This document shows, piece by piece, positions 26,605 to 50,370 of a stretch of 64,000 bases of DNA; position 1 is the first letter of the stretch; each line of letters begins with the position of its first letter. The notes beneath the pieces are model-generated. The model did not search any database, was not told the DNA's origin, and saw only the letters and a program-made list of their open reading frames with translations. Location of the stretch: positions 162,304 through 226,303 of the IMG/VR virus record IMGVR_UViG_3300042319_002138. One strand, given 5' to 3'. A program made the position numbers and the translations under genes.

Positions 26605-26678
26605 CGATGTGTATATCAGTTGGTTAGATAGACACTCTGATAAGGTGTAGGTCGGAGGTTCGAGCCCTCCCACATCGA
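26605..26678 (+). tRNA. tRNA-Ile(GAU)
   Basis: Cloverleaf; anticodon loop CTGATAA. Confidence 0.93.
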
Positions 26679-26718
26679 CAAAAAAGAAAAAGTTCTTTGA
26701 TGTATTGGTATTAGTAAT

Positions 26719-26791
26719 GACTCAGTAGCTCAATTGGTAGAGCTCCACACTGTTAATGTGGCCGTTACAGGTTCAAGTCCTGTCTGAGTCG
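26719..26791 (+). tRNA. tRNA-Asn(GUU)
   Basis: Cloverleaf; loop CTGTTAA. Confidence 0.93.
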
Positions 26792-26794
26792 CTG

Positions 26795-26915
26795 AGGTTG
26801 ATTGGGGAATGATATAACGTTAACGTGTCAGTAGTCGTGGTTATATCGGAGTTGTAACTGTCCGAGTAAAGCCAATCGTAAAAGGGGATGTCCACACAAC
26901 CATCTTCCCCTTTCC
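26795..26915 (+). ncRNA. Candidate structured RNA between tRNA-Asn and tRNA-Tyr
   Basis: GATTGG/CCAATC, GATATAAC/GTTATATC and GGGGATG/CATCTTCC stems. Confidence 0.5.
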
Positions 26916-26921
26916 TAACTT

Positions 26922-27002
26922 GGGAACTGAAAGTCGTTTGGATACGGCAGCGAAACTGTAAATTTCGTCCTCGCGGGAGTGGTTCGAGTCCACCAGGTCC
27001 CA
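26922..27002 (+). tRNA. tRNA-Tyr(GUA), atypical D arm
   Basis: Loop CTGTAAA, T arm GGTTCGAGTCC, acceptor GGGAACT/AGGTCCC. Confidence 0.75.
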
Positions 27003-27070
27003 CAAAAAAAAATAAATGTAATATAAGTGGATTTTAACTCTGTTTGTTATATTTATAATAAAAGAATATT

Positions 27071-27520
27071 ATGAAACAGAGAGAAGTTAAAATTACTGAT
27101 GAAGAAATAAAGTTGGCATATGACAAATACGACACACTACATCAGGCATCCGCAGAATTAAAAATGACTACTGTGTCATTATGGAGAAGGGCAAAAAAAA
27201 TTGGTTTAGCCTGGAAAGATAAAAACTTTAAACCTGAACAACAAAAAATACCTTTAAACGAGATTATAGAAGGTAAACATCCGTACTACCAAACCTTAAA
27301 ATTAAAAAAAAGGTTATTGAAAGAAGGGGTTAAAGAAAATAAGTGTGATATTTGCGGTATAATAGATTGGAATAATATAGAGTTATCAATGCAATTAGAC
27401 CATATTGATGGTGACTCACACAACCACAAATTGGATAATTTAAGGATGGTTTGCCCTAACTGCCATTCACAAACAAACACTTATTGTGGTAAAAATAAAA
27501 AAATCAAAGCGGAAATTTGA
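27071..27520 (+). CDS. HNH homing endonuclease inside tRNA cluster 1
   Basis: 'KCDICG...QLDHIDGDSHNHKLDNLRMVCPNCH'. Confidence 0.9.
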   Translation: MKQREVKITDEEIKLAYDKYDTLHQASAELKMTTVSLWRRAKKIGLAWKDKNFKPEQQKIPLNEIIEGKHPYYQTLKLKKRLLKEGVKENKCDICGIIDWNNIELSMQLDHIDGDSHNHKLDNLRMVCPNCHSQTNTYCGKNKKIKAEI

Positions 27521-27550
27521 AAACAACATGTCTTCCTGTATATTTTATAC

Positions 27551-27622
27551 GCGTCTTTGGTGTAATTGGTAGCACGGCTGGTTCCAACCCAGTCGGTCAG
27601 GGTTCGAGGCCTTGGGGATGTG
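27551..27622 (+). tRNA. tRNA-Trp(CCA)
   Basis: Loop TTCCAAC; G-U-rich acceptor. Confidence 0.8.
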
Positions 27623-27627
27623 CAAAT

Positions 27628-27703
27628 GGTGATGTAGCTCAGTTGGTAGAGCAAAGGACTGAAAATCCTTGTGTCGAAGGTTCAATTCCTTCCATCACCA
27701 CCA
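27628..27703 (+). tRNA. tRNA-Phe(GAA)
   Basis: Loop CTGAAAA; encoded CCA. Confidence 0.95.
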
Positions 27704-27707
27704 TTAT

Positions 27708-27782
27708 AGGGTAATGGACTAATTGGCAAGTCACCACGTTTGGGACGTGGGCATCGTGAGAGTTCGAGTCTCTCTTACCCTA
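27708..27782 (+). tRNA. tRNA-Pro(UGG)
   Basis: Loop TTTGGGA. Confidence 0.9.
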
Positions 27783-27790
27783 CTATACAA

Positions 27791-27863
27791 TGTCCTATGG
27801 TGTAATTGGCAACACGTCGGTTTTTGGTACCGAAGAGTCGAGGTTCGAACCCTTGTGGGACAA
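27791..27863 (+). tRNA. tRNA-Gln(UUG)
   Basis: Loop TTTTGGT. Confidence 0.9.
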
Positions 27864-27869
27864 CAATAT

Positions 27870-27943
27870 GGTGTTTGAAGCATTAAGGTGATGTACTAGT
27901 TTGTGGGACTAGGAAAGACGGGTCGGTACCGTCCTTACACCCA
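27870..27943 (+). tRNA. tRNA-His(GUG), non-canonical T loop
   Basis: Loop TTGTGGG; G-1 extended acceptor; T loop GTCGGTA. Confidence 0.75.
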
Positions 27944-27947
27944 AAAA

Positions 27948-28037
27948 GGAAAGGTGGGTGAGTGGCTAAAACCAACAATCTGCTAAGTTGTCGTACCTGT
28001 AAGGGTACCGAGGGTTCGAATCCCTCCCTTTCCTCCA
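27948..28037 (+). tRNA. tRNA-Ser(GCU)
   Basis: Loop CTGCTAA, long variable arm, CCA. Confidence 0.93.
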
Positions 28038-28040
28038 TAT

Positions 28041-28112
28041 GTGGATGTGATGTAACGGTTAACATGAGACTCTTATACAGTCTTCTCGGTGGTTCAACTC
28101 CACCCATCCATA
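28041..28112 (+). tRNA. tRNA-Ile(UAU)
   Basis: Anticodon arm AGACT-CTTATAC-AGTCT. Confidence 0.8.
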
Positions 28113-28117
28113 CTATT

Positions 28118-28191
28118 ACACTCTTAGCTCAATGGATTAGAGCACAACGTTACGGACGTTGGGGTTGGTGGTTCGAGTCCATCAGAGTGTA
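28118..28191 (+). tRNA. tRNA-Arg(ACG)
   Basis: Loop TTACGGA. Confidence 0.9.
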
Positions 28192-28200
28192 CAATAATAA

Positions 28201-28271
28201 GGCACCATGCCCGAGTGGTTAGGGGTCGGTCTGCAAAACCGCTTACATTGGTTCGAACCCAATTGGTGCCT
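28201..28271 (+). tRNA. tRNA-Cys(GCA)
   Basis: Loop CTGCAAA. Confidence 0.92.
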
Positions 28272-28354
28272 CTATCTTTAATTTCTTTTATATTCAATAT
28301 AGGCCCAAACACCAACAAATATTGGGGTTAGTATAGCAATAACTATTTCTGTAT

Positions 28355-30562
28355 TCATCGCATAATTGTTAAATGTCCTGTTATCATTTTACGTGAGTCA
28401 TCATACTCAGACCCATACATTATTCTCCAAACATAAATCCCATCAAAACACATTTTATTATTATAAGTACCATCCCAACCAACGGTATGATTGTATGATT
28501 CAAAAATTGTTTCACCCCATCTATTGAATACCAATAAATTATAATCATAGACATCAAACCCATCAGTAAATATTGGTAACCAAATATTGTTGAAAGCATC
28601 ACCATCGGGGGTAAATGTATTAGGTATATAAATTAATTCTTGTGGACATTCTTGTATTGCTATATTAGCTTGTTCTTCATTAGAAACACAACCATTAACC
28701 GTTTGGGAAACGCTAATTGTATAAAAACCAACATTATTCCAAACATAAGGTAAACTATTATCTTGTATTGTATCACCTTCAACAACCCAATCAAACAACC
28801 CAGATAAAGATGAATAAGCTGTATAGATTCTAAAAATACTATCACCTTCACAAAGTTGGTTAAATTCATATGAAGGTGTTACAGATGTTATGATTGGTTG
28901 TGGGTTTACAATAACGTTGATTGTTGTATCAAATGGGCAATTACTTTGTGTATATGTATAAGTTACATCATTGTTTGTTATGATACCTTGTTGTGGGCAA
29001 AATTCATCAGTCTGAACCCCATTGACTAAGAAAGTACCATTTAAAGGTGAACCCACTAAATCTACACAACCATCATAATCACAAAAAGGACCAATAGGGT
29101 CTATTGTAGGGTTTATGTTTAAAATAAATGTAGTGAAGTAAGAGGTATCACTATTACAACCAATAGGACTAGTAGAATAAACACTTATAGAGTCTTGATA
29201 TAAACCACTAGGTTCTAATGACCAATCCGTTGTTATATTATCAGTACCTTGACCATTTATTATTTGTGGTGTTGTAGACCATATGTAGTTGTAACCAACA
29301 CCCATAGAAGGTACACTATAACTTTCTGATGTTGATAAATAACATACCGTATCAGGACCACTAATAGGTGTCATTATTATTTGTGCTGGGTTAGTGAGTG
29401 TTGCATTACCTGTTACGGTACAACCTATACCGTCTGTAATTAAAAAACTATAATTACCATAACAAAGGTTAGTGGGGTTAAAAGTTGTTTGTAGAGTATT
29501 CCAAGAAATAGTAGTGACACCATTGGTTCCGTTAGGGATTACATTAATACTACCATCACAATAGTTATAACAAGTTGGGTCAATAAAAGTAATTGTAGGT
29601 TGTGGTAAGTTAGGTGGACCAGGTTGTACAAACACCGTATCAGGTCCTGGACCGGCAATACTATTACAAGTATTCCATCCAACATTACAAGAAGGATATA
29701 CTAGTTGACAAGTATAATTAGCTCCTTGTACAGGTGGTGTAACCGTAATGGACGCACCAACCCCAATTGGATTTGGGTTACCTACAATATACCATGTTGG
29801 TACAGGTAAAACAGTTGGTCCACTTGGAGTGTATCGGTACGCATCATTATTTGCTGTCCATTGTGTGGAATTCCTACCTGGTACAGTTATCGCCACGGTT
29901 CCTGTGGTATTATGTAATCCTTGAACCGCGGTACCTCCCGCCCAAGCTAGACAGTTTGGTTTTGATTGAATATAATTTTCTATTACGTTTGTTGATTCAT
30001 AAATCACTGTATGAAATGTCCCCAGTAAATTTGTACATGAAAACATAGGGACACCAACCCAACTAACAACTAATTTTCTACAAGGTGCTGTACCTTGAAC
30101 TTGGTACCTAATTTGCCCACCTAAACCTGGGTGCCAATCTTGCCAAGGACCCATGACACAATTTTTTGGTACTGTACCCGCACCATTAGGTATTGTTGCT
30201 GAAGTAAATGTTGTTGGTTGTGCCGGTGAAAAAGAAATCCAACCGTTAGAACCAACCCAAAATTGATTGTATGTTTGTCCAAAGAAACAAAATGTAAACC
30301 CAATATTAAAAGGACCTTGTTGTGAATCATCCGACATAAATAATTGTGTACCAGTATTTGTTTGTGTTACATAAGGAATATTTGTAACACCGTAGTTTGT
30401 TGTTTGATTTGGATTTGAACCTGGTCCACATTGACTAAAATCGGCAGTTAATGTTGTTGACCCAACACCACAAGGTAGTATTTGGTCTGGTCCTAAATAA
30501 GGACAGTATTGTGAATAGGTCACAAAAGAAATTAGTATAAAAAGGTATTTAATTAAGTTCAT
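28355..30562 (-). CDS. Secreted adhesin-like protein with T9SS type B (gliding motility-associated, CHU_C) C-terminal domain
   Basis: Signal peptide ending YSQ; C-terminal 'YIPNTFTPDGDAFN...VFNRWGE...GWDGTYN...GIYVW'. Confidence 0.88.
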   Translation of the reverse strand: MNLIKYLFILISFVTYSQYCPYLGPDQILPCGVGSTTLTADFSQCGPGSNPNQTTNYGVTNIPYVTQTNTGTQLFMSDDSQQGPFNIGFTFCFFGQTYNQFWVGSNGWISFSPAQPTTFTSATIPNGAGTVPKNCVMGPWQDWHPGLGGQIRYQVQGTAPCRKLVVSWVGVPMFSCTNLLGTFHTVIYESTNVIENYIQSKPNCLAWAGGTAVQGLHNTTGTVAITVPGRNSTQWTANNDAYRYTPSGPTVLPVPTWYIVGNPNPIGVGASITVTPPVQGANYTCQLVYPSCNVGWNTCNSIAGPGPDTVFVQPGPPNLPQPTITFIDPTCYNYCDGSINVIPNGTNGVTTISWNTLQTTFNPTNLCYGNYSFLITDGIGCTVTGNATLTNPAQIIMTPISGPDTVCYLSTSESYSVPSMGVGYNYIWSTTPQIINGQGTDNITTDWSLEPSGLYQDSISVYSTSPIGCNSDTSYFTTFILNINPTIDPIGPFCDYDGCVDLVGSPLNGTFLVNGVQTDEFCPQQGIITNNDVTYTYTQSNCPFDTTINVIVNPQPIITSVTPSYEFNQLCEGDSIFRIYTAYSSLSGLFDWVVEGDTIQDNSLPYVWNNVGFYTISVSQTVNGCVSNEEQANIAIQECPQELIYIPNTFTPDGDAFNNIWLPIFTDGFDVYDYNLLVFNRWGETIFESYNHTVGWDGTYNNKMCFDGIYVWRIMYGSEYDDSRKMITGHLTIMR

Positions 30563-30705
30563 TTTTTTTTTATTTATAAATATAATATTAAGACGTATTT
30601 AAATGTAAATAGAAGGAACACTTATCCCAAAAGGTGGGATTGGAGAATATCTAGTACTTTTGGCTTATTTTTTAAATTTACGATTAAATAGAATATTTAT
30701 ATTAT

Positions 30706-31455
30706 ATGAAGTTAATTAGAGAATTCGATGATTTTAGTTGGACTAATATGGGTACACTTAATCCGTTTATGAGTGATGACCCACTTGTTGTTGTATGGTT
30801 AGATAAATCTGCCACTGAATCAGAGATTAATAAATTATATGATATGCTTTTGGAAGTTAATATAGAAATTAGTACATCAAAGTCAGATTTTGTAAAAAGT
30901 TTATTAACATATTCTAGAAATGGGTCTGCATATGTTAAATCTTACATAGCTCAAAATGGTGAAAAAAGAGCTGGGTATGGTGATACAAAAGCTTTATTTG
31001 ATGAACATAAATATTGGAAAGCTATGGAAGATTTAGACGGTAAACCATATATAGAATATAAATTAGGTGATATCTTTAAAGATAGATTAAATGAGTCTGA
31101 AGAGTTAAATTGGATTATAGAAAGTAACCCATCATTTAGAAACAAGATAATTATTTTTGAACCACTGATTATTGAGGATGAGTATAATATTGTTATAGAT
31201 GGTTTATTAGAATTTGATGAGGACCTTTATACCTATAGTGGTAATTTAGAAGAATTAAGACCTTTCACTTCTTATGATTATTTACACCATTTAGTTATAG
31301 GTTTAAATGGTGTAGTAGCTTATGGTGGGGCCAATGAACATAACAACGAAGACTGGGGTGGTTTTATGGATAACGTAGAAAATTACATAGGTAATTATTA
31401 TAAAAATTTTAACAACCCAGAAGTTATTGATGGAAGAAAATATTTTAATCTTTAA
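30706..31455 (+). CDS. Acidic two-module protein (MKLIREFDDFSW; internal RLNESEELNWI)
   Basis: ATATTTATA upstream; shared motif family. Confidence 0.6.
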   Translation: MKLIREFDDFSWTNMGTLNPFMSDDPLVVVWLDKSATESEINKLYDMLLEVNIEISTSKSDFVKSLLTYSRNGSAYVKSYIAQNGEKRAGYGDTKALFDEHKYWKAMEDLDGKPYIEYKLGDIFKDRLNESEELNWIIESNPSFRNKIIIFEPLIIEDEYNIVIDGLLEFDEDLYTYSGNLEELRPFTSYDYLHHLVIGLNGVVAYGGANEHNNEDWGGFMDNVENYIGNYYKNFNNPEVIDGRKYFNL

Positions 31456-31479
31456 TAACTCCAATTAATACTTATTGAT

Positions 31480-33405
31480 ATGGATAAAAATTTTTACATT
31501 AATAAATTAAATAAAACTTTAATTTCACAAACACATAACCCTCTTTTTTATAAAGGGGATATAGTAGAAGGTTCTAAAATTCTAACTAAAGAAGTTGTAG
31601 ACTCAATTAATGTTGATAGATGTTCTATATGGTTATACAACAAAAATAAAACATCTATTGTTTGCCAACAATTATATGTTAAATCTGAAAATATGTGGTA
31701 TGATGGTTTAGAAATCTTTGAAAAGGATTTTGGACCGTATTTCGAAGAATTAATAAAGAACCCAATAATAATAGCTAATGATGCTGAAAAACATCCAGCA
31801 ACATCTTGTTTTACTGATGGTTATTTAAAACCACTGGGTATTAAATCTATGTTAGATGTACCTATCATTTATTTTGGGGAAACTATTGGTGTTATATGTA
31901 TTGAAAGTTTTACATTACGTGAATGGGATTCTTTTGAGGTTGATTTTACTCAATTATTATCTTCTTTATACACTTTTGCTTATTCAATAAAAGAAACAAA
32001 CAATTTAAATAAAAAAATAGAAGAAACAGAAAAATTTATTGACGTATCGACAATTATATCTACTGCTGATAAAAGAGGTAAAATTACATATGTTAATAAA
32101 AAATTTGAGGATGTTTCTGGGTGGTCTTTGGATGAGGTAGTTGGTAAAGACCATGTTATTGTTAATTCGGGATTACAACCTGATGGATATTGGGGTAAAA
32201 TGTATGAAACGGTAATGAAAGGTGATGTATGGAATGACGTTGTTACCAATAAAGGAAAATCAGGAGAATTATATTACGTTGATACTTTTATTAGAGCAAT
32301 TTTTGATACCGATGGTAAATTGGATGGATTTGCTTCAATAAGACAAGATGTTACAGAACTTAAAAAAAAGGAAGTTGAAATTCGCAATAGAATGAACGCG
32401 ATAAATAAATCTAACGCAGTTATTGAGTTTGATTTAGAAGGAAACATCATTTTTGCTAATAATTTGTTTTTAGAAACTATGGGATATTCTTTACAGGATG
32501 AAGTAGTTGGAAAACACCATAGAATTTTTATAGATGAGGAATACTCAAAAAGTGAAGAATACTCTCTTTTTTGGGAAAAATTAAATGAAGGGGTGTTATT
32601 TACCGGTGAAATTACTAGAATTAAAAAAGACGGTTCTTTAGTGTATCTACAAGCAACATACAATCCAGTTATCGGTTTAGATGGTAAGGTTTATCGTGTT
32701 ATGAAAATCGCGACAGATATCACCAATTCCTACGAACAAAAGAAAGAAATTGAAAAGAAAAACACTTACCTAGAACATGCGGCTAAAATATTAAGACACG
32801 ATATGCATTCAGGTATTAATACTTATATGCCAAGAGGATTAAGTTCTTTAGAAAGAAGATTAACCCCCGAAGATATTAAAACTTTAAAAATTGAGGCCCC
32901 AATTAAAATGATTAAAGAGGGTTTAAAACATTCCCAAAAAGTATATAAAGGGGTTTACGAATTTACAAATCTTGTAAAGAAAGATGTTGTTTTAAATAAA
33001 ACGGAATGTAATTTAAAAGATATACTTGAGGATTATTTATCAGCGACAGCATATAGTAGTCAAGTTATTATTGATGAGTTACCAACGATAGAAGTTAATG
33101 AACCATTATTCTGTACCGCAGTCGATAATTTAATTCGTAATGGGTTAAAGTATAATGATAGTAATACAAAATTTGTTAAAATATATATGGAAGATGGTAA
33201 TCTAATTATACAAGACAACGGTAGAGGGATTACACAAAAAGATTTTATTCATTTATCCCAACCATATACCAGAAAAGAAGGCCAAAAAGAATCTGGAACT
33301 GGTCTAGGGCTTAATATATGTGTAGCTATTTTAGAAGAACATAAATTTAATATTTCGTGTGAGAAAAATGACATAGGGACAAAAATGAAAATTGAACTAA
33401 AATGA
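31480..33405 (+). CDS. Cytoplasmic sensor histidine kinase (GAF-PAS-PAS-HisKA-HATPase)
   Basis: GAF 'MLDVPII..GVICIE'; two PAS/PAC; H box 'RHDMHSG'; N box 'DNLIRNGLKY'; 'DNGRG'; 'GTGLGL'. Confidence 0.93.
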   Translation: MDKNFYINKLNKTLISQTHNPLFYKGDIVEGSKILTKEVVDSINVDRCSIWLYNKNKTSIVCQQLYVKSENMWYDGLEIFEKDFGPYFEELIKNPIIIANDAEKHPATSCFTDGYLKPLGIKSMLDVPIIYFGETIGVICIESFTLREWDSFEVDFTQLLSSLYTFAYSIKETNNLNKKIEETEKFIDVSTIISTADKRGKITYVNKKFEDVSGWSLDEVVGKDHVIVNSGLQPDGYWGKMYETVMKGDVWNDVVTNKGKSGELYYVDTFIRAIFDTDGKLDGFASIRQDVTELKKKEVEIRNRMNAINKSNAVIEFDLEGNIIFANNLFLETMGYSLQDEVVGKHHRIFIDEEYSKSEEYSLFWEKLNEGVLFTGEITRIKKDGSLVYLQATYNPVIGLDGKVYRVMKIATDITNSYEQKKEIEKKNTYLEHAAKILRHDMHSGINTYMPRGLSSLERRLTPEDIKTLKIEAPIKMIKEGLKHSQKVYKGVYEFTNLVKKDVVLNKTECNLKDILEDYLSATAYSSQVIIDELPTIEVNEPLFCTAVDNLIRNGLKYNDSNTKFVKIYMEDGNLIIQDNGRGITQKDFIHLSQPYTRKEGQKESGTGLGLNICVAILEEHKFNISCEKNDIGTKMKIELK

Positions 33406-34016
33406 TAAAACTAAAAAATTTATTAACCATATTTTTCATAAGTATGGTAAGTATAGTGTATTCACAACCAACCTACCCTATCCAGACACAATTAAAAGGT
33501 GATTCTGTGGTTATTCTTACAAAAAAACAATCTGATGATATTAATTCACTAATTGAGAATCAAAAAATTAGAATACAAAAATATAAAACAGAAATAAAAT
33601 TAGTTAATGATACTAACACGTTATTAAATAACGATATTAAAATAAAAGATAGTGTTATTAACCAATTGGATAGTTTGTTAACCGTCCAAAACAATTATTA
33701 CGATAGTTTAATTTCTAAAATAGATACGTTAGAGAATTGGATTTTATCGTCGTCGATAGATAATGGGTACCTATATTATTCTTGGCAAGACTCAACAGTT
33801 AAAGTTATTGATTTAAGTTTGTATATGTTAGTATCGCATAGAGGAAGTGGTAATTATAGTTTAATTACAAGAGGTGATGTTACTAATATATATTATTGGA
33901 AACAAATAAATCTACTTAAAGAAGAAAGTCCTGAGATTGGTTGGGAATTAAATATATCCCCAAAATATAAACCAAGAATAGTATTATTCCCATATAAATT
34001 AACCCCAAAATTATGA
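33402..34016 (+). CDS. Secreted coiled-coil protein in two-component locus
   Basis: Signal peptide ending YSQ. Confidence 0.6.
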   Translation: MIKLKNLLTIFFISMVSIVYSQPTYPIQTQLKGDSVVILTKKQSDDINSLIENQKIRIQKYKTEIKLVNDTNTLLNNDIKIKDSVINQLDSLLTVQNNYYDSLISKIDTLENWILSSSIDNGYLYYSWQDSTVKVIDLSLYMLVSHRGSGNYSLITRGDVTNIYYWKQINLLKEESPEIGWELNISPKYKPRIVLFPYKLTPKL

Positions 34017-35416: not shown

Positions 35417-35423
35417 AAAAAAA

Positions 35424-35861
35424 ATGATTGATTCTATATTATTAGTTGATGACGAGGATTTATTCCATTTAGTATTTGAGGATGCGTGTTCCTTATTAGA
35501 TATAAGTTTGTCTTTAAACGCGTTAAACAGTTCTGACGAAGCAGCAAAACTATTCCAAAAATGGTTCCAAAGTGGTAATGAAGACAATAAACCAGAATGT
35601 GTTTTTGTTGACTTAAATATTATTGGTAGTTCTTTTGATGGTATTGAGTTAATTAGAAAAATAAACTTTGAATATGGTAACCATGTGGTTATTGGTATAA
35701 TTTCATCGTCTAATGAACCAGATGAACAAGCTAAAGCATTACAAGCTGGAGCACAGTTTTGGATTATTAAATCAGACGATATAGAACCAAGACTAGAAGA
35801 ATTTAGAAAAGATTACGAAGGTTATAAAAATAGAACCGCACCATTTAAAGTTTACAAATGA
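35424..35861 (+). CDS. Stand-alone response regulator (receiver domain)
   Basis: 'ILLVDD', phosphoacceptor 'FVDLN', 'ISSS', 'WIIKS'. Confidence 0.92.
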   Translation: MIDSILLVDDEDLFHLVFEDACSLLDISLSLNALNSSDEAAKLFQKWFQSGNEDNKPECVFVDLNIIGSSFDGIELIRKINFEYGNHVVIGIISSSNEPDEQAKALQAGAQFWIIKSDDIEPRLEEFRKDYEGYKNRTAPFKVYK

Positions 35862-36535: not shown

Positions 36536-36541
36536 AAATAG

Positions 36542-36572
36542 TTTGACAATTAATAAACTTTTACTATATTTG
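36542..36572 (+). promoter_or_regulatory. Bacteroidota-type promoter for leader 2 / tRNA cluster 2
   Basis: TTTGACA and TATATTTG; flanking sequence closely resembles the leader-1 promoter. Confidence 0.75.
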
Positions 36573-36614: not shown

Positions 36615-36716
36615 ATGAAAACAACAATGACATACAAACAAGGGACCGTTAAAACGGTTGATGGGAAAGTGGATTCACTTTTCTACGGACATGGGTTGTC
36701 ATACTGGAGTTGTTGA
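36615..36716 (+). CDS. Leader peptide 2 (33 aa, MKTTMTYKQGTVKTVDGKVDSLFYGHGLSYWSC)
   Basis: Short ORF between promoter and terminator; codons mirror tRNA cluster 2. Confidence 0.8.
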   Translation: MKTTMTYKQGTVKTVDGKVDSLFYGHGLSYWSC

Positions 36717-36741: not shown

Positions 36742-36773
36742 AACCCTGGGTCCAAAAGATTCAGGGTTTTTTG
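36742..36773 (+). terminator. Attenuator terminator of tRNA cluster 2
   Basis: AACCCTGGGTC-caaaa-GATTCAGGGTT plus T-tract. Confidence 0.8.
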
Positions 36774-36799: not shown

Positions 36800-36889
36800 G
36801 GAAGGGTGGCAGAGTTGGTCTATTGCATCTGATTTGAAATCAGAAGTACCTTTGAAAGGGTACCGTGGGTTCGAATCCTACCTCTTCCT
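36800..36889 (+). tRNA. tRNA-Ser(UGA)
   Basis: Loop TTTGAAA, long variable arm. Confidence 0.93.
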
Positions 36890-36896
36890 CATAAAT

Positions 36897-37082: not shown

Positions 37083-37091
37083 CAATAAATT

Positions 37092-43236: not shown

Positions 43237-43306
43237 TATAAAAGGTAATAATTGTTAATTACAAAATTTGACTTTTTAAGAAATACAACTATATTTATAA
43301 TATAAA

Positions 43307-43375
43307 ATGAAAAATACGAACATCATATCATTATTAGAAAGATTAGAGAGATTTAGTCTAATGGAGATGGTATGA
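43307..43375 (+). CDS. Leader peptide 3 (22 aa, MKNTNIISLLERLERFSLMEMV)
   Basis: Core codons TTA TTA GAA AGA TTA GAG AGA match downstream Leu(UAA), Glu(UUC) and Arg(UCU). Confidence 0.78.
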   Translation: MKNTNIISLLERLERFSLMEMV

Positions 43376-43396: not shown

Positions 43397-43432
43397 AAAA
43401 CCCGTCTCTTAAAACAGATGGGTTTTTTTTTT
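43397..43432 (+). terminator. Attenuator terminator of tRNA cluster 3
   Basis: AAAACCCGTCT-cttaaaac-AGATGGGTTTT plus T-tract. Confidence 0.8.
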
Positions 43433-43486
43433 GAAAAAGATTTGGTAGATTAAAAAAGATTACTTACATTTGTAAGACAAACAACG

Positions 43487-43917: not shown

Positions 43918-44000
43918 GCTCGGGTGGTGAAATAGGTATACACGTTTGACTTAAAATCAAATTCCCATTGGGAGTGAGGGTTCAAGTCCCTCTCCGAGTA
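43918..44000 (+). tRNA. tRNA-Leu(UAA)
   Basis: TTTGA-CTTAAAA-TCAAA, long variable arm. Confidence 0.92.
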
Positions 44001-44061
44001 CTGTGAAATGAACAACGTCACCACAAGAGTTGTACCTTTATGGTTTTATAATGTGGTATTT

Positions 44062-44133
44062 GGTCCTATCGACTATCGGTTAGGTCGTCAGGTTTTCATC
44101 CTGGAAAGCGGGGTTCGATTCCCCGTAGGACTA
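44062..44133 (+). tRNA. tRNA-Glu(UUC)
   Basis: Loop TTTTCAT. Confidence 0.92.
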
Positions 44134-44216
44134 CAAAAGAGGTGGATACTTTGTACGTAGATAATTTAGTAATATCTTGTCGTAGTGCACCGTTGACGAA
44201 ACCTCTTTTATTTTTG

Positions 44217-44289
44217 GGTCCCGTAGTGTAATGGATTAACATAAGGAGCTTCTACCTCTTTGATTCAGGTTCGAATCCTGACGGGACTA
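44217..44289 (+). tRNA. tRNA-Arg(UCU)
   Basis: Loop CTTCTAC. Confidence 0.9.
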
Positions 44290-44356
44290 CTAAAAAAATA
44301 TTAACTACTAGGTTCGATTTTTAATAAACCTTAAATATTTATTAATAAAATATATT

Positions 44357-44962
44357 ATGAATTTTGAGGAAAAATATAATAAAGAAGAACTTGAGAAGTT
44401 AATTTTTGTTGAGAGTAAGAGTTATCGTGAAATTGGTAAAATTTATGGTGTTAGTGACGCATACATAAAAAAAGTGTGTGGCAGATTAGGGATTAAACTT
44501 AGAAAAAGAAAAAATTTTCCTGAAAATTTTATACCACACAATAAAGGTATGGGTAAAAAAGTTATATGTAAAAATTGTGGTAAAGAAACAAAAAGTTCAC
44601 ACGATAAACAAATATATTGTTCATTTGATTGTAATGTGGAACATAAAAATAAAAATAAATACAAAGATTACTTAGACAATCAAGAAAAATATTGTAATAC
44701 CACATCAGGTTTGCGATGGTTAAAAAAATATTTTTTAATAGACCAAGATAATAAGTGTAATATTTGTGGAATAGATAATTTTTGGAACGGTAAACCATTA
44801 GTTTTTGTTATGGACCATATAAACGGTGATGCTAGTAATAACAAAAGAGATAATCTAAGATTAATATGTCATAATTGTGATTCACAGTTAGACACATACA
44901 AATCTAAAAATAAGAATTCAGCAAGGAAAGAAAGATATTTGTTAAACTACAAAAATATTTAA
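44357..44962 (+). CDS. HNH homing endonuclease inside tRNA cluster 3
   Basis: 'KCNICG...VMDHINGDASNNKRDNLRLICHNCD'; N-terminal CxxC module. Confidence 0.9.
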   Translation: MNFEEKYNKEELEKLIFVESKSYREIGKIYGVSDAYIKKVCGRLGIKLRKRKNFPENFIPHNKGMGKKVICKNCGKETKSSHDKQIYCSFDCNVEHKNKNKYKDYLDNQEKYCNTTSGLRWLKKYFLIDQDNKCNICGIDNFWNGKPLVFVMDHINGDASNNKRDNLRLICHNCDSQLDTYKSKNKNSARKERYLLNYKNI

Positions 44963-45177
44963 AATAAACGAGAAAGAGATACTCGTAGGGTTTTTAAGTA
45001 TCCCTCAAAACTTAACGGAGCTGGTACCACCACGTCAAGGGGTACTCGTTGGGAATCGGAAGGAAGACTCTCCTATCCCCCAAGTAAGAGTTGACTTTTA
45101 AGTGGTAAGACACGTTGGGTTTTGAAATAGAAAAACTGTGAATATCTACTCACCATTAATCTCAGGTGGGGAAACAT

Positions 45178-45283
45178 AGTCAGGTGGCGGAATTGGTTAG
45201 ACGCTAAATTAACGAGTGGATAGTGTGCCATTGGGGAAGGGCCAAGAAAGTTACACATACAGGTTCAAGTCCTGTCCTGACTA
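45178..45283 (+). ncRNA. tRNA-like RNA (Leu-type D arm, T arm, acceptor AGTCAGG/CCTGACT) lacking a canonical anticodon arm
   Basis: TGGCGGAATTGGTTAGACGC ... ACAGGTTCAAGTCCTGT; the middle does not form a 5-bp stem with 7-nt loop. Confidence 0.7.
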
Positions 45284-45300
45284 CAAAAAAATAAAAAATT

Positions 45301-45549
45301 ATGGAAAATAAAGAAACATACCAAATGGTGAATTATGATGGTGATAGTTACGACAGTAAGATCCCTGTGGAATTAGTTGAGTCGTTCCTTAAAATGAAAG
45401 AACTAATGGAACAGGTGTCTAATGGGAAATATTATTGTACACCAAGTATGTATTATACAGATGAATTGGAAGGTGTTTCAGTAGGTATAGTTGAGGTTAA
45501 TGGTGACGGGACACATATTAAAACACCATTTAGTTTAATTATCAAATAA
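45301..45549 (+). CDS. Hypothetical protein
   Basis: ORF between the two tRNA-like RNAs. Confidence 0.55.
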   Translation: MENKETYQMVNYDGDSYDSKIPVELVESFLKMKELMEQVSNGKYYCTPSMYYTDELEGVSVGIVEVNGDGTHIKTPFSLIIK

Positions 45550-45554
45550 AAAAT

Positions 45555-45635
45555 AGTCAGGTGGCGAAATGGTGACGCCTAAATGAGACCCGTGGGGCGA
45601 AAAGACTCTCGTAGGTTCAAATCCTGTCCTGACTA
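45555..45635 (+). ncRNA. Second tRNA-like RNA with identical acceptor AGTCAGG/CCTGACT and no anticodon arm
   Basis: TGGCGAAATGGTGACGC ... GTAGGTTCAAATCCTGT. Confidence 0.7.
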
Positions 45636-45640
45636 ATTTA

Positions 45641-45714
45641 GGTCCTTTAGCTCAGTCGGTTAGAGCAACAGACTCATAATCTGTGGGTCCACGGTTCGAG
45701 CCCGTGAAGGACCA
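45641..45714 (+). tRNA. tRNA(CAU), probably Ile2 (lysidine type)
   Basis: ACAGA-CTCATAA-TCTGT; body resembles bacterial Ile2. Confidence 0.8.
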
Positions 45715-45797
45715 CAATCCCTTTGTATTGACAAGGGGATTTTTATTTTGATATTTAAAAATAATTCCTTATCTTTGTAGAAATAAAATAAGGGACT

Positions 45798-47796: not shown

Positions 47797-47980
47797 AGAT
47801 TTTATATTTGAAGAAGGTAAGGATTATTACCTAGAGAATGGGGCTATTGTTTTAACTGAACGATACCATAAAAAACGTGGTACTTGTTGTGGCAGCGGTT
47901 GTAGACACTGTTGTTTTGACCCAATACACCAAAAGGGTAATAAAAATCTTAAAGAATATCTGAAGACTAAAGAAAAGTAA
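47789..47980 (+). CDS. DUF5522-like Cys-rich protein
   Basis: 'LTERYHKKRGTCCGSGCRHC'. Confidence 0.8.
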   Translation: MDKDFIFEEGKDYYLENGAIVLTERYHKKRGTCCGSGCRHCCFDPIHQKGNKNLKEYLKTKEK

Positions 47981-47991
47981 GATATTTATTA

Positions 47992-48456
47992 TTGATGAAA
48001 CGATTGATTAAGAAAATTTTAAAAGAGTCTTTTTTGGATGATTTTGGTATGTCATCCAATTATAAATATGATCCTTTAAATTGGGAACAAGATGCTCAAG
48101 ATGTGGGTGGTGCTAAAAAATTAGCAGATGAAATTTATGGTGGTGACTATAATAATTTCTTAGATAGAATTCCACAATTAGAAGAGGAACAACTTAAAAC
48201 TGATACTATAAAGGTAATGACTGTTAACGGTAAAAGCGTTGAGAGGGATTATAGATATGTAATGTATAAAGATGGTGAAAGAGATATTATGGCTTACGAC
48301 CATGACACTAACCAAATGTTTGTAGATGATTCTATTTGGACGTTTTTGAGACAGGGATTTGATCTGAATTCTTCAGAAATATCAGATATATTCCGAGATT
48401 GGATAAAAGAAAATTATGGATTAGACGTTCCTTATATCCATTCACAAAAACTTTAA
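47992..48456 (+). CDS. Hypothetical protein with MKRLIKKILKES tag
   Basis: GATATTTAT upstream. Confidence 0.65.
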   Translation: MMKRLIKKILKESFLDDFGMSSNYKYDPLNWEQDAQDVGGAKKLADEIYGGDYNNFLDRIPQLEEEQLKTDTIKVMTVNGKSVERDYRYVMYKDGERDIMAYDHDTNQMFVDDSIWTFLRQGFDLNSSEISDIFRDWIKENYGLDVPYIHSQKL

Positions 48457-48460
48457 TTAT

Positions 48461-49249
48461 ATGAAATTAGTTGAGGTATATAATGATTTAATGGTTGAAA
48501 AGGCCTGGAAAAAATTAGATGAGATATTATTAAATGCTGATATTTTACAAGAAGCTGACCCAACTAAATTAAATGACCTATTAAAAAAATCAAAGGTATT
48601 AATATTTGATGCATTTGGTATTAATCCTTCTCAACGTGAATACTTTATCGCTGGTTCTGCTAGATTATTTAAAAATCCCATGTTATTGAAGGCTTTAAAC
48701 CAAATGGATAGTAGAACTTGGTCCATGGATATTGGTGATTTGGATATTGTTGTACCTGATGAAAGTAATTGGAAAACATTATATACAAATTATACCACTG
48801 ATTCAGAGTTTTTAAAAAAAATAGGTAATGTTATAGGTGAAGAAAACGTACCAAAGATTGTTGAACGTTTTAAAAAACAATGGGAAGATTTTGGTGGTAA
48901 GGTTTACAGACCAGGTTTAGGTAAAAATGGTTTAGGTCTTATTAAAGAAGATATGGAAGCTTTTACTACATGGGACCCCAAAAGGGCTAAAGTTCAAGGA
49001 GCAAATGATTTTGATGTTAGGGACGAACAATCAATATTAAAAGATTCTGTTAACATGGGTGGTTTTTATTTTATGAGTATCTATGATGTTATGGATTATA
49101 AATCAAAATTAAACAGAGAAAAAGAAACAGAATTAGTTAAGTTTGTTAACCAATTTATAGAACAGGGTGAGACACCACAAGCTAAAGAAGTACTATTCAA
49201 AAACATATACACACTTTTTAAAGCTGAACAACAACAAAAATCAAAATAA
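48461..49249 (+). CDS. Putative nucleotidyltransferase-fold protein
   Basis: 'FIAGSARL' plus 'DIGDLDIVV' (GS...DxD). Confidence 0.55.
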   Translation: MKLVEVYNDLMVEKAWKKLDEILLNADILQEADPTKLNDLLKKSKVLIFDAFGINPSQREYFIAGSARLFKNPMLLKALNQMDSRTWSMDIGDLDIVVPDESNWKTLYTNYTTDSEFLKKIGNVIGEENVPKIVERFKKQWEDFGGKVYRPGLGKNGLGLIKEDMEAFTTWDPKRAKVQGANDFDVRDEQSILKDSVNMGGFYFMSIYDVMDYKSKLNREKETELVKFVNQFIEQGETPQAKEVLFKNIYTLFKAEQQQKSK

Positions 49250-49267
49250 TTTTATTATATTTGCCTT

Positions 49268-49546
49268 ATGAAAGGTAAAGACTACTTTAATTGGTTGAAT
49301 GAGGAAGAACAATCCAAATGGATTGCCAATTTTAACTCATTGAATAAATTTAACTATTCTGTAGAGGAATTTTTAGATTTAGAATTTATCAGCTGGATGG
49401 GGTTTATTGGTGTTTCTTTTGAATTTAGAAAAACACTCGAAGGTGTTAATTATTGGGCTGACGTTTATTCTAAATACAGAAAGTATGATAATCTAAAAGT
49501 TAAACCAGGTTTTAATAATTTTAAAACACCACCTAAAATTTTGTAA
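49268..49546 (+). CDS. Hypothetical protein
   Basis: TATATTTG promoter. Confidence 0.55.
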   Translation: MKGKDYFNWLNEEEQSKWIANFNSLNKFNYSVEEFLDLEFISWMGFIGVSFEFRKTLEGVNYWADVYSKYRKYDNLKVKPGFNNFKTPPKIL

Positions 49547-49577
49547 AAAATTGTTATATTTGTAAAAAATAAAAATT

Positions 49578-49742
49578 ATGGAAAGATTTTCGATGAAACA
49601 GGTTATTGCCAACAAGTATGGTGAAACAGAGAAGAACACAAAAACAGCAAAGTCCACAAAACGTTCCCAAGGTAAAACAAAGGACCAAGGGAAATATATG
49701 GTTAAGATTGTTGATGGGGTAAAATACATGGTCTTAAAATAA
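49578..49742 (+). CDS. Small basic protein (54 aa)
   Basis: TATATTTG promoter; not in the ORF track. Confidence 0.5.
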   Translation: MERFSMKQVIANKYGETEKNTKTAKSTKRSQGKTKDQGKYMVKIVDGVKYMVLK

Positions 49743-49804
49743 TTAAAAAAAAAATTGACAGATTAAAAAAAAGTTATTATCTTTGTTAAACAAATAAAAA
49801 ACAT

Positions 49805-49913
49805 ACACAAGTGGTGAAATTGGTAAACACGGGGTGTAACAACTCTGACCGAAAATAATCTACCTTCGGGTCGATAAAAGTAGGTTTTGGAGGTTCGAAT
49901 CCTTCTTTGTGTA
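49805..49913 (+). ncRNA. tRNA-like RNA with aberrant anticodon arm and expanded variable region
   Basis: Acceptor ACACAAG/TTTGTGT, D arm TGGTGAAATTGGTAAACAC, T arm GGAGGTTCGAATCCTTC. Confidence 0.65.
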
Positions 49914-50002
49914 CACTAATCACATAGTATCACTATCATTATCTAGTGAGTAAATAGTAGAGTAAATCTACAGCTATGTGATAAAGTTCTTTGAAATAAT
50001 AC

Positions 50003-50292
50003 ATATAAGTGGCGGAATTGGTAGACGCTTACGTTTGAAAAGAGAGTAAGGTTAGATTGGGAGTTCTGTAAAAGCCTAAAAGACCTTAGATTTAGCTAAT
50101 CTTGGTGGTCTATAATCAGACTGGTCAAGAGGTTTGGTTACGGTACTCTTTAAAAACCAACTGTAACAAGTTATATAGATAGATTTAATAATATGATAGA
50201 ATTAAATCCTTAGACTCTTGTAAAATGTATGGACTGAAAGAAACCTAGTTTTGAATAAGTTCGTGGAGGTTCGAATCCTCCCTTATATACCA
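50003..50292 (+). ncRNA. 290-nt RNA with tRNA ends (acceptor, D arm, T arm, CCA) and an insert of about 235 nt
   Basis: ATATAAG-TGGCGGAATTGGTAGACGC ... GGAGGTTCGAATCCTCC-CTTATAT-ACCA. Confidence 0.75.
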
Positions 50293-50297
50293 TATAT

Positions 50298-50370
50298 TGT
50301 GGGATGGAGAAGTTGGTATCTCAGCAGGCTCATAACCTGAAGGCCGCTGGTTCGAGTCCAGCTCCCGCTA
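50298..50370 (+). tRNA. tRNA-Met(CAU), initiator-like
   Basis: Loop CTCATAA; mismatched 1:72 pair. Confidence 0.85.

What the first reader, a model, noticed from the sequence alone, without database searches (positions are those of the whole stretch)
26605..50370. Complete 20-amino-acid tRNA set partitioned almost without redundancy among separately controlled clusters
27 tRNAs: 12 in cluster 1, 10 in cluster 2, 4 in cluster 3 and a lone initiator-like Met. Only Ser, Arg, Leu and Ile/Met appear in more than one cluster, and then as different isoacceptors or CAU variants. Most lack an encoded CCA, so they depend on a CCA-adding enzyme. This modular split is what independent feedback units would need.
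Basis: partly seen in the sequence, partly recalled or inferred. Interest (0 to 1): 0.6.

Follow-up and report, generated by a model that had tools for sequence, protein, structure and literature searches.

The report
Phage tRNA clusters with codon-matched attenuators
A large lake-water phage carries a near-complete set of tRNA genes in separate clusters, and the two main clusters sit behind a tiny leader gene that spells out the codons read by that cluster's own tRNAs, followed by a terminator, which looks like a previously undescribed on-demand control of tRNA supply.

Summary
Default ARAGORN finds 24 tRNAs. There are 24 distinct anticodons covering 60 of 61 sense codons. The missing CGG is 8 of 60,002 phage codons. 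"No redundancy between clusters" follows trivially from one gene per anticodon.

Clusters 1 and 2 each have a Bacteroidetes-type promoter, a 33-36-codon leader ORF and a strong intrinsic terminator 18-31 nt before the first tRNA. Leader 1 has codons for all 12 cluster-1 tRNAs, matched to isoacceptor, which is unique in a six-frame scan of the genome. Leader 2 covers 8 of 9 cluster-2 anticodons.

Related lake phages partition their tRNAs differently, and their leaders follow. With seven module types, the true leader-cluster pairing is the single best of 5,040 permutations. 1:2, 2:3 and 3:4 alternative helices are present, with compensatory changes.

Cluster 3's leader is doubtful. The initiator-like Met has no leader. 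The 8.5-kb gap between clusters 1 and 2 is a lineage-specific difference, but the module boundary is conserved among the relatives examined.

There are no expression data. Seven literature searches found no precedent.

The parts
26365..26394 (+). Module 1 promoter motif (TTG-N19-TAnnTTTG, Bacteroidetes type), with a conserved AAACTTTT element
   Evidence: Pattern scan. The sigma-70-type scan also lists it. The motif is conserved in relatives.
26399..26410 (+). Conserved 5' leader box ATATTTAATTAA, shared by modules 1 and 2 and by modules of related phages
   Evidence: Used as the search pattern.
26424..26534 (+). Leader ORF 1 (36 codons). In codons 2-22, 20 of 21 codons are read by cluster-1 tRNAs, and all 12 cluster-1 tRNAs are represented, including ATA, AGC and CGT
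   Evidence: It is the only locus with all 12 among 142,499 stop-free 21-codon windows in six frames.
26434..26442 (+). Segment 1, which pairs with segment 2 (the anti-antiterminator helix)
   Evidence: The 9-bp helix with 26497-26505 is paired in all 6 family-A sequences and shows one compensatory C-G to U-A change.
26495..26505 (+). Segment 2, inside the 3' part of leader ORF 1. It can pair either with segment 1 or with the 5' arm of the terminator (26555-26565)
   Evidence: Duplex -9.7 kcal/mol against a shuffle mean of -6.1 (p=0.03). The nucleotides are conserved but are read in a different frame in L053.
26560..26591 (+). Intrinsic terminator 1 (11-bp stem plus U run), 18 nt before tRNA-Ile
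   Evidence: Compensatory changes in relatives.
26605..28272 (+). tRNA cluster 1: Ile(gat) Asn Tyr | HNH-like ORF | Trp Phe Pro Gln His Ser(gct) Ile(tat) Arg(acg) Cys
   Evidence: The same order is found in L011/13/14, L018/19 and G003.
27071..27520 (+). HNH-like endonuclease ORF inserted between Tyr and Trp. In L014 and L019 the Tyr-Trp spacer is only about 80 nt
   Evidence: Pfam HNH E=1e-3, below the curated cut-off. Spacers.
28273..36542 (.). 8.3-kb block separating modules 1 and 2. It holds a CHU_C/T9SS protein on the minus strand, two PAS/GAF histidine kinases and a response regulator
   Evidence: Pfam. Absent in L014 and L019, where the modules lie 0.3-0.8 kb apart. A gap of about 6 kb is present in G003.
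36543..36572 (+). Module 2 promoter motif, a paralog of the module 1 promoter
36615..36716 (+). Leader ORF 2 (33 codons). In codons 2-22, 19 of 21 codons are read by cluster-2 tRNAs. 8 of 9 anticodons are represented; Ala is missing
   Evidence: Among roughly the top 12 loci genome-wide. Homologs in L014, L019, L061, L068 and L096.
36687..36701 (+). Segment 2 of module 2, complementary to the 5' arm of the terminator (36744-36753)
   Evidence: Duplex -11.1 kcal/mol, p=0.15 in the window. 0/500 and 5/500 shuffles in the homologs L039 and L068.
36742..36773 (+). Intrinsic terminator 2 (11-bp stem plus U run), 31 nt before tRNA-Ser
36800..37896 (+). tRNA cluster 2: Ser(tga) Asp Val Thr Lys CAU CAU(degenerate) Ala Gly Leu(tag)
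43268..43297 (+). Promoter motif in front of candidate leader 3
43307..43375 (+). Candidate leader ORF 3 (22 codons). Codons 9-15 are TTA TTA GAA AGA TTA GAG AGA, followed later by ATG GAG ATG. All 4 cluster-3 tRNAs are represented
   Evidence: Tied with four other loci genome-wide. Not found in L008.
43397..43433 (+). Intrinsic terminator 3
43442..43472 (+). Second promoter motif, downstream of terminator 3 and conserved in L008. It could drive cluster 3 without attenuation
43918..45715 (+). tRNA cluster 3: Leu(taa) Glu Arg(tct) | HNH-like ORF 44357-44962 | tRNA-like 45178-45284 | ORF 45301-45549 | tRNA-like 45554-45636 | Met(cat). It ends at terminator 45716-45741
49755..50371 (+). Unit 4: promoter motif 49755-49785, tRNA-like 49805-49914, a tRNA-like element of about 310 nt at 49983-50293, and the initiator-like tRNA-Met 50298-50371. 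There is no leader ORF

Best explanation
The window is the end of a jumbo phage genome from lake water. The record is 226 kb and about 70% complete. The host is probably in the Bacteroidota.

**What it is.** The phage's tRNA genes are organised as operons under ribosome-mediated transcription attenuation. Modules 1 and 2, and perhaps module 3, are each read from one promoter into a short leader ORF. That ORF contains at least one codon for nearly every tRNA encoded downstream.

**How it most likely works (inferred).**
1. When all those aminoacyl-tRNAs are plentiful, the ribosome runs through the leader and over segment 2.
2. The terminator (segments 3:4) then forms, and RNA polymerase stops 18-31 nt before the first tRNA.
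3. When any one of the tRNAs is scarce, the ribosome stalls in the sensor part of the leader and masks segment 1.
4. Segment 2 is left free to pair with the 5' arm of the terminator.
5. Polymerase reads on into the whole tRNA cluster.

Each module is therefore a negative-feedback supply unit for its own tRNA set. The sensors favour rare G-ending codons read by wobble, which should make them more sensitive.

**Shown.** The anatomy, the codon-to-tRNA match, its co-variation in relatives, and the alternative helices.

**Inferred.** Translation of the leaders, the direction of the switch, and its biological trigger. Possible triggers are decay of the host tRNA pool or tRNA-cleaving defence systems.
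For: **Anatomy**
- Each of modules 1 and 2 has a promoter motif, then a leader ORF, then an 11-bp terminator. Only 18 nt (module 1) or 31 nt (module 2) separate the terminator from the first tRNA. There is no room for another promoter, so the tRNAs can only be expressed by read-through.
- The four strongest plus-strand terminators in 26001-46000 are the three behind the leaders and the one at the end of cluster 3.

**Codon match**
- Leader 1: 20 of 21 sensor codons are cognate to cluster 1, and 12 of 12 tRNAs are represented. This is a unique genome-wide maximum.
- Leader 2: 19 of 21 codons and 8 of 9 anticodons.

**Co-variation in related phages**
- Phages found through a flanking gene and through the leader DNA motif carry differently composed modules with matching leaders. 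Examples are Pro-Gln-Tyr-Thr-Gly-Lys, Asn-His-Trp-Ser-Ile-Met-Arg-Arg-Ser, Cys-Val-Leu-Leu-Leu and Phe-Glu-Asp-Ala.
- With 7 module types, the true pairing is the single best of 5,040 permutations (5.35 against a mean of 2.04, sd 0.68).
- Every leader scores highest on its own cluster, and 49 of 50 tRNAs have a cognate codon in their own leader.

**Module boundary**
- In L019 the 287-nt gap between Cys and Ser(tga) holds a promoter, a leader and a terminator.

**RNA switch**
- The 1:2 helix and the terminator are 99% paired in six family-A sequences and show compensatory changes.
- Segment 2 follows the terminator sequence across module types. 0-2 of 500 shuffles reach the observed duplex energy in A_L066, B_L039, D_L073, D_L092 and F_L083.
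- Segment 2 nucleotides are conserved while the reading frame differs, which points to constraint at the RNA level.

**Sensor tuning**
- Rare G-ending codons make up 30% of U34-read sensor codons against 10% in the genome. CCG is 6 of 7 Pro codons against 5% in the genome.
Against: - No transcript, ribosome-profiling or tRNA-seq data exist. Only DNA runs from lake water hold the phage.
- In the window itself the 2:3 duplexes are weak: p=0.03 for module 1, 0.15 for module 2 and 0.18 for module 3.
- Many sensor codons occur only once, whereas classical attenuators use runs of regulatory codons.
- Leader 2 has no Ala codon although tRNA-Ala is in the cluster.
- Leader 3 is not conserved in L008, and a conserved promoter lies downstream of its terminator.
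- Leaders lag behind tRNA loss. L008 keeps the full leader 1 although its cluster is reduced to Ile, Arg and Cys. L007/L096 keeps a leader 2 rich in Lys, Val and Thr although its cluster is reduced to Glu, an unassigned tRNA and Met.
- By raw count of cognate codons, other AT-rich windows in off-frames come close to the leaders.
- The module types are paralogs found partly through a shared motif, so they are not fully independent.
- HNH-like ORFs inside clusters 1 and 3 could carry promoters of their own.
Confidence: 0.72

Rival explanations
1. The clusters are fragments of one ancestral tRNA array, broken up passively by insertions of homing endonucleases and a gene cassette. On this view the partition has no regulatory meaning and the small upstream ORFs are incidental.
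For: - In L011/13/14 and L018/19 the same tRNA order is nearly contiguous, with gaps of 0.3-0.8 kb where the window has 8.5 kb.
- HNH-like ORFs sit inside clusters 1 and 3 only in this phage.
- tRNA content varies from 0 to more than 24 among relatives.
Against: - The short gap in L019 itself contains a promoter, a leader ORF and a terminator, so the boundary is a conserved regulatory junction.
- The leader-cluster codon match is unique genome-wide.
- The match co-varies across module types, with the true pairing best of 5,040.
- Insertions explain the distance between the clusters, not the modules themselves.
Confidence: 0.08
2. The leader ORFs encode small functional peptides, or are independent small genes with their own promoter and terminator. 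On this view their resemblance to the tRNA sets is a by-product of composition or shared ancestry.
For: - The N-termini (M-K/R/I-T...) and parts of the peptides are conserved among homologs.
- Leaders persist where the tRNAs have been lost, as in L008 and L007.
Against: - The order of residues is shuffled between homologs while the set of residues is kept.
- The 3' part is conserved as nucleotides in different reading frames.
- Composition changes in step with the tRNA content of the paralogous modules.
- No promoter fits between the terminator and the first tRNA.
Confidence: 0.05
3. The leaders do sense translation, but with the opposite or a different logic. Efficient leader translation might be needed for read-through, giving positive autoregulation or a timing switch. 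Alternatively the leaders might report amino-acid starvation or general translation stress rather than tRNA supply.
For: - The direction of the switch is inferred only from predicted helices, and the 2:3 helices are weak in the window.
- Stalling at a codon reports charged tRNA, so it cannot tell lack of an amino acid from lack of the tRNA. This follows from established knowledge of attenuation.
Against: - The geometry of segments 1:2, 2:3 and 3:4, with the ORF running through segment 2, is that of classical stall-induced read-through.
- The use of rare wobble-read codons fits a hunger sensor.
- The regulated products are the very tRNAs that read the sensor codons.
Confidence: 0.12
4. The clusters are temporal expression classes (early, middle, late) set by different promoters. 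This is the plain reading of 'separately controlled'.
For: Each cluster has a promoter motif of its own.
Against: - Modules 1 and 2 have near-identical paralogous promoters and 5' leaders, which gives no sign of different temporal classes.
- No phage sigma factor or RNA polymerase evidence was sought or found.
Confidence: 0.03

Closest known systems
Ribosome-mediated transcription attenuation of amino-acid biosynthesis operons (trpL, hisL, leuL, thrL, ilvL, pheL). The ilv and thr leaders are multivalent
   Same: - A short leader ORF carries regulatory codons.
- Helices 1:2, 2:3 and 3:4 are mutually exclusive.
- An intrinsic terminator lies before the regulated genes.
- Rare codons are used for sensitivity; theory in PMC1183508.
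- By my recollection the mechanism has been predicted in Bacteroidetes by comparative genomics.
   Different: - The regulated genes here are tRNAs, not enzymes.
- The leader is a barcode of 4 to 12 different tRNA species, many present as a single codon, rather than a run of one to three amino acids.
- The ORF runs through segment 2.
- It is encoded by a phage.
pheM leader attenuator of pheST (phenylalanyl-tRNA synthetase) in E. coli
   Same: A component of the translation apparatus is placed under leader-peptide attenuation by its own cognate codons. This gives feedback on the supply of charged tRNA.
   Different: It controls a synthetase and senses a single amino acid. It does not control tRNA genes.
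T-box riboswitches
   Same: The logic is the same: a terminator/antiterminator switch reporting the state of a specific tRNA.
   Different: A T-box binds uncharged tRNA directly, through a specifier codon and the T-box sequence, without translation. No T-box hit was found here at E<=1. T-boxes control synthetase and amino-acid genes.
tRNA gene clusters of large phages (T4, T5, KVP40, mycobacteriophage arrays, huge phages; PMC7162821)
   Same: - Dense arrays of tRNA genes are interspersed with homing endonucleases.
- Most genes lack an encoded CCA.
- A tmRNA accompanies them.
- Roles in codon supply and in escape from tRNA-cleaving defence have been proposed (PMC10264068, PMC11555353, PMC12409363).
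   Different: No leader-peptide control of such arrays turned up in seven full-text searches. Here the set is a minimal one-gene-per-anticodon set split into sensor-coupled modules.
Flavobacterium phage vB_FspM_immuto (cultured; Immutovirus)
   Same: tRNAs are followed by a calcineurin-like phosphoesterase gene, as in the window. Its tRNA-Glu is 92% identical to the window's.
   Different: It has only four tRNAs, and I found no leader ORF with a terminator upstream of them.

Membership tests
Ribosome-mediated (leader-peptide) transcription attenuator | A short ORF with start and stop codons lies in the 5' leader, downstream of a promoter | tested here: met
   ORFs at 26424-26534, 36615-36716 and 43307-43375 lie behind promoter motifs. 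Homologous ORFs are kept in relatives.
Ribosome-mediated (leader-peptide) transcription attenuator | Regulatory codons are cognate to the product of the controlled genes | tested here: met
   Leader 1 has 12 of 12 tRNAs, leader 2 has 8 of 9, leader 3 has 4 of 4. The true pairing is the best of 5,040 permutations across 7 module types.
Ribosome-mediated (leader-peptide) transcription attenuator | An intrinsic terminator lies between the leader ORF and the controlled genes | tested here: met
   11-bp stems with U runs at 26560-26586, 36742-36768 and 43397-43426. Compensatory changes.
Ribosome-mediated (leader-peptide) transcription attenuator | An antiterminator helix overlaps the terminator and is governed by ribosome position | tested here: inconclusive
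   The 2:3 duplexes are stronger than shuffles in most relatives, with 0-2 of 500 shuffles reaching them in five modules. In the window they are only p=0.03, 0.15 and 0.18. The 1:2 helix is supported by one compensatory pair.
Ribosome-mediated (leader-peptide) transcription attenuator | Read-through rises when the cognate charged tRNA is limiting | not testable with these tools
   No RNA runs hold the phage.
Phage tRNA gene array | Several cloverleaf tRNA genes are detected by independent tools and are conserved in related phages | tested here: met
   24 by ARAGORN and 22 of these by Rfam. The order is conserved in L011/13/14, L018/19 and G003.
Complete (20 amino acid) tRNA set | At least one functional tRNA for every amino acid | tested here: inconclusive
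   19 amino acids are covered by confident genes. His rests on a divergent gene that both tools miss at default thresholds, although it keeps G-1, C73 and the GTG anticodon.
T-box riboswitch | A match to the T-box covariance model (specifier loop and T-box sequence) | tested here: not met
   No T-box hit in 26000-51000 at E<=1.
Bacterial initiator tRNA (the lone Met at 50298) | A 1:72 mismatch, A11:U24, and three G:C pairs at the foot of the anticodon stem | tested here: inconclusive
   U1.U72 and A11:U24 are present, but there are only two G:C pairs plus one A:U. The 1:72 mismatch is kept in L008.

The most novel reading that the evidence does not exclude
A lineage of lake jumbo phages runs a demand-driven tRNA economy of its own. 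The tRNA genes are grouped in modules, each gated by a leader ORF that acts as an evolvable codon barcode of exactly the tRNAs behind it. The phage therefore switches on only the module whose tRNAs have become limiting. The cause could be a decaying host tRNA pool or cleavage of particular anticodons by host defence nucleases. This would be leader-peptide attenuation applied to tRNA genes, and a built-in sensor of tRNA-targeting immunity.
Probability: 0.45. Interest if true: 0.9.

Novelty: new variant of a known kind. Interest (0 to 1): 0.85.

Why it matters
How phages regulate their own tRNA genes, and why they carry them, is an old open question. The candidate answers are codon supply, host shut-off and escape from tRNA-cleaving defence.

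A sensor written in the codons of the very tRNAs it controls would show that supply is regulated by demand. It would make the question testable: deplete one tRNA and see which module opens.

It would extend leader-peptide attenuation from amino-acid metabolism to tRNA genes, and from one to three sensed amino acids up to twelve tRNA species. It would also offer a compact, reprogrammable part for reporting the state of chosen tRNAs in Bacteroidota.

The leader-cluster rule could further be used to annotate phage tRNA operons and to judge which marginal tRNA genes are still under selection.

Tried and rejected
- **Close cultured relative.** Megablast of 26000-46000 against cultured phages found only a tRNA-Glu match. 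A distant search with leader 1 gave only weak AT-rich hits in Lak phages. Flavobacterium phage immuto shares synteny but has no leader-terminator unit.
- **Raw cognate-codon count as the statistic.** I dropped this as the main measure because AT-rich off-frame windows score nearly as high. I used the number of distinct cluster tRNAs represented instead.
- **Expression evidence.** 24 lake-water DNA runs hold the phage and none is RNA.
- **CCA-adding enzyme.** None was found in the 226-kb record. The record is about 70% complete, so absence from the phage is not shown.
- **Y-RNA idea for the odd tRNA-like elements.** A TROVE/Ro-like protein lies nearby, which suggested this. I rejected it on topology, because the 5' and 3' ends form the acceptor stem. 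There was also no Rfam hit other than tRNA.
- **Group I intron in the 49983-50293 element.** No Rfam hit at E<=1.
- **Leader 3.** It is not confirmed as a conserved module.
- **Genetic code and restricted material.** No alternative genetic code was needed. Everything reads in table 11.

Full report
**What the window is**

The window is the last 64 kb of a single 226,303-bp virus record with 30.8% GC. IMG/VR classes the record as linear, and CheckV rates it about 70% complete. At least 24 lake-water metagenome runs hold it, all DNA.

Several features point to a Bacteroidota host:
- One ORF has a CHU_C type IX secretion sorting domain.
- Promoter-like motifs of the form TTG-N17-21-TAnnTTTG occur 21 times on the coding strand against 6 on the other, mostly in intergenic DNA.
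- A cultured Flavobacterium phage shares synteny and a 92% identical tRNA-Glu.

**Checking the observation**

ARAGORN at default settings finds 24 tRNAs and a tmRNA. Rfam confirms 22 of the tRNAs and misses Tyr and Lys.

These add His(gtg) at 27871-27942 and two CAU genes at 37307-37380 and 37393-37458.
- Comparison with orthologs shows that His, Lys and Tyr of this phage have lost the canonical D and T loops.
- The second CAU gene is a degenerate copy of a good Met gene in relatives.

The set has 24 distinct anticodons, and only CAU is repeated. It reads 60 of 61 sense codons. The missing CGG makes up 8 of 60,002 codons in the phage's long ORFs.

CCA is encoded in 3 of the 27 genes. The lone Met at 50298 has a 1:72 mismatch and A11:U24, so it is initiator-like.

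'No redundancy between clusters' follows automatically from one gene per anticodon, so it is not a separate observation.

**What lies in front of the clusters**

Clusters 1 and 2 have the same layout:
- a promoter motif at 26365-26394 or 36543-36572;
- a conserved 5' box;
- a short ORF at 26424-26534 or 36615-36716;
- an 11-bp intrinsic terminator at 26560-26586 or 36742-36768.

The first tRNA follows 18 or 31 nt after the terminator stem. No further promoter fits in that space, so the tRNAs can be made only by read-through.

In the 20 kb scanned, the four strongest plus-strand terminators are the three behind the leader ORFs and the one that closes cluster 3.

**The codon match**

- **Leader 1.** Codons 2-22 encode I T N N I H I S N R N Q W Y Q P C F I N N. 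Of these 21 codons, 20 are read by cluster-1 tRNAs. All 12 cluster-1 tRNAs are represented, down to isoacceptor level: ATA for Ile(tat), AGC for Ser(gct) and CGT for Arg(acg). Among 142,499 stop-free 21-codon windows in all six frames of the genome, this is the only locus with all 12.
- **Leader 2.** 19 of 21 codons are cognate to cluster 2, and 8 of 9 anticodons are represented. Ala is missing.
- **Candidate leader 3** (43307-43375). It has seven consecutive cluster-3 codons and all four cluster-3 tRNAs. It ties with four other loci genome-wide.

**Relatives**

A search with the gene downstream of cluster 2 gave 27 loci in IMG/VR.
- Five are the same phage.
- In L011/13/14 and L018/19 the tRNA order is the same, but clusters 1 and 2 lie only 0.3-0.8 kb apart.
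- The 287-nt gap in L019 holds a promoter, a homologous leader ORF and a terminator.

The 8.5 kb separating the clusters in the window carries a T9SS-domain protein, two histidine kinases and a response regulator. It is a lineage-specific difference placed exactly at a conserved module boundary. Whether it arose by insertion in this lineage or by loss in the relatives was not resolved.

A search for the conserved promoter and leader DNA motif gave 76 stretches. Of the 82 motif matches within them, 41 have tRNAs just downstream. Fetching whole tRNA regions from five records added further modules.

The modules differ in content, and their leaders follow:
- Pro-Gln-Tyr-Thr-Gly-Lys sits behind a leader made almost only of K, T, Y, Q, G and P.
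- Asn-His-Trp-Ser-Ile-Met-Arg-Arg-Ser sits behind a leader of I, N, H, M, S, W and R. It uses AGA and CGT for the two Arg isoacceptors and TCG and AGT for the two Ser isoacceptors.
- Cys-Val-Leu-Leu-Leu sits behind a leader rich in L, V and C.
- Phe-Glu-Asp-Ala sits behind a leader rich in F, A, E and D.

With seven module types, the true leader-cluster pairing is the single best of 5,040 permutations. Every leader scores highest on its own cluster, and 49 of 50 tRNAs have a cognate codon in their own leader.

**The RNA switch**

In family A, a 9-bp helix joins codons 4-7 (segment 1) to a stretch in the 3' part of the ORF (segment 2). It is paired in all six sequences and shows a compensatory C-G to U-A change. 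The terminator also shows compensatory changes.

Segment 2 can pair instead with the 5' arm of the terminator. As the terminator sequence changes from one module type to the next, segment 2 changes with it. In five modules, 0-2 of 500 shuffles reach the observed duplex energy. In the window's own modules the values are weaker, at p=0.03, 0.15 and 0.18. Combining one module per type by Fisher's method gives about 1e-6; this is my own arithmetic.

Segment 2 nucleotides are conserved although they are read in different frames in different phages. This points to constraint at the RNA level.

The geometry is that of classical attenuation. A ribosome stalled in the sensor masks segment 1 and frees segment 2, so the terminator cannot form. 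A ribosome that runs on passes over segment 2, and the terminator forms.

**Sensor tuning**

Among codons read by U34 tRNAs, G-ending codons make up 30% in the sensors against 10% in the genome's ORFs (binomial p=2e-11; the leaders are not all independent). CCG is 6 of 7 Pro codons against 5% in the genome. Rare, wobble-read codons are what a hunger sensor would use; PMC1183508 gives the theory.

**Limits and counter-examples**

- There are no expression data.
- Leader 3 is absent from L008, and a conserved promoter lies downstream of its terminator, so cluster 3 may be largely unattenuated.
- The initiator-like Met unit has a promoter but no leader. I think this makes sense, because elongation stalling cannot sense an initiator tRNA.
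- L008 keeps leader 1 intact although its cluster is reduced to Ile, Arg and Cys, around an endonuclease-like ORF.
- L007/L096 keeps much of leader 2 although few tRNAs remain. Leaders therefore lag behind tRNA loss.

**Comparison with what is known**

The mechanism is that of leader-peptide attenuation as in trp, his, leu, thr, ilv and pheST. Three things are new here: the target is a set of tRNA genes, the multi-species codon barcode covers 4-12 tRNAs, and the system is carried by a phage.

No T-box is present. Seven full-text searches found no report of leader-peptide control of tRNA operons. The searched library lacks most subscription journals, so this is not proof of absence.

Recent work shows that phage tRNAs counter tRNA-cleaving defence systems (PMC10264068, PMC11555353, PMC12409363). 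That gives a plausible trigger for the switch.

**Verdict**

The finding is best filed as a new variant of a known regulatory kind and is of high interest.

Noticed in passing
window 49805-49914; L008 about 17850-17966: A tRNA-like RNA with normal acceptor, D (Leu-like) and T arms but a stretch of about 57 nt where the anticodon arm should be. It sits directly behind a promoter motif and ahead of the initiator-like tRNA. It is conserved in L008, with compensatory changes in the acceptor stem. Its function is unknown.
   Followed up: partly
window 49983-50293: An element of about 310 nt with a tRNA-Leu-like 5' end (acceptor and D arm) and a canonical T arm and 3' acceptor, separated by an AT-rich insert of about 230 nt. 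It is absent from L008. There is no group I intron hit in Rfam.
   Followed up: partly
window 45178-45284 and 45554-45636: Two paralogous tRNA-like elements with the same acceptor stem and disrupted anticodon regions. They flank an 82-codon ORF (45301-45549), just upstream of tRNA-Met 45641.
   Followed up: no
window 57946-58388: A phage-encoded tmRNA (99 bits, full length) with a Bacteroidetes-type promoter motif of its own, ending 20 nt upstream. In relatives L013-15 and L018-19 the tmRNA lies upstream of the tRNA array instead, and it has a different tag peptide.
   Followed up: no
window 28355-36535: A cassette that is unusual for a phage lies between tRNA modules 1 and 2. It comprises a 735-aa protein with PKD-like and CHU_C (T9SS) domains on the minus strand, two histidine kinases (one with GAF and two PAS domains) and a response-regulator receiver protein.
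   Followed up: partly
window 18574-20016: A DUF2828/DUF7788 protein (phrog_850, annotated as 'RNA-binding protein'; I recall the family as TROVE/Ro-like). It is about 50% identical to proteins of tRNA-rich phages such as KVP40 and Cronobacter phage S13.
   Followed up: no
window 37229-37301 (Lys), 27871-27942 (His), 26922-27003 (Tyr): These three tRNAs have lost the canonical D-loop GG and the T-loop TTCGA that their orthologs in L014, L019 and G003 keep. The same loci are held in five other metagenome contigs, L001-L005, where default ARAGORN calls the same genes (Lys included) at the same spacing. They may be decaying, or they may be selected atypical tRNAs.
   Followed up: partly
L008 3528-5032: Leader 1 and its terminator are intact, but the array behind them is reduced to Ile(gat), Arg(acg) and Cys. 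A 125-codon endonuclease-like ORF fills the gap. This looks like a recent tRNA loss that the leader has not yet tracked.
   Followed up: partly
window 43656-43808; L008 12581-12670: A small ORF is conserved at protein level between the second cluster-3 promoter and tRNA-Leu(taa). Its function is unknown.
   Followed up: no
genome G000:C1 69351-69446 (minus strand; outside the window): The only tRNA call outside the window is a 96-nt tRNA-Tyr(gta) on the opposite strand. It would be the one duplicated anticodon apart from CAU.
   Followed up: no
G002 (L108-L112): This related phage record (162 kb, 46% complete) splits its tRNAs into four leader-gated modules: {His Trp Ser Asn Arg Arg}, {Cys Val Leu Leu Leu}, {Phe Glu Asp Ala} and {Pro Gln Tyr Thr Gly Lys}. 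This is a different partition of the same kind.
   Followed up: yes
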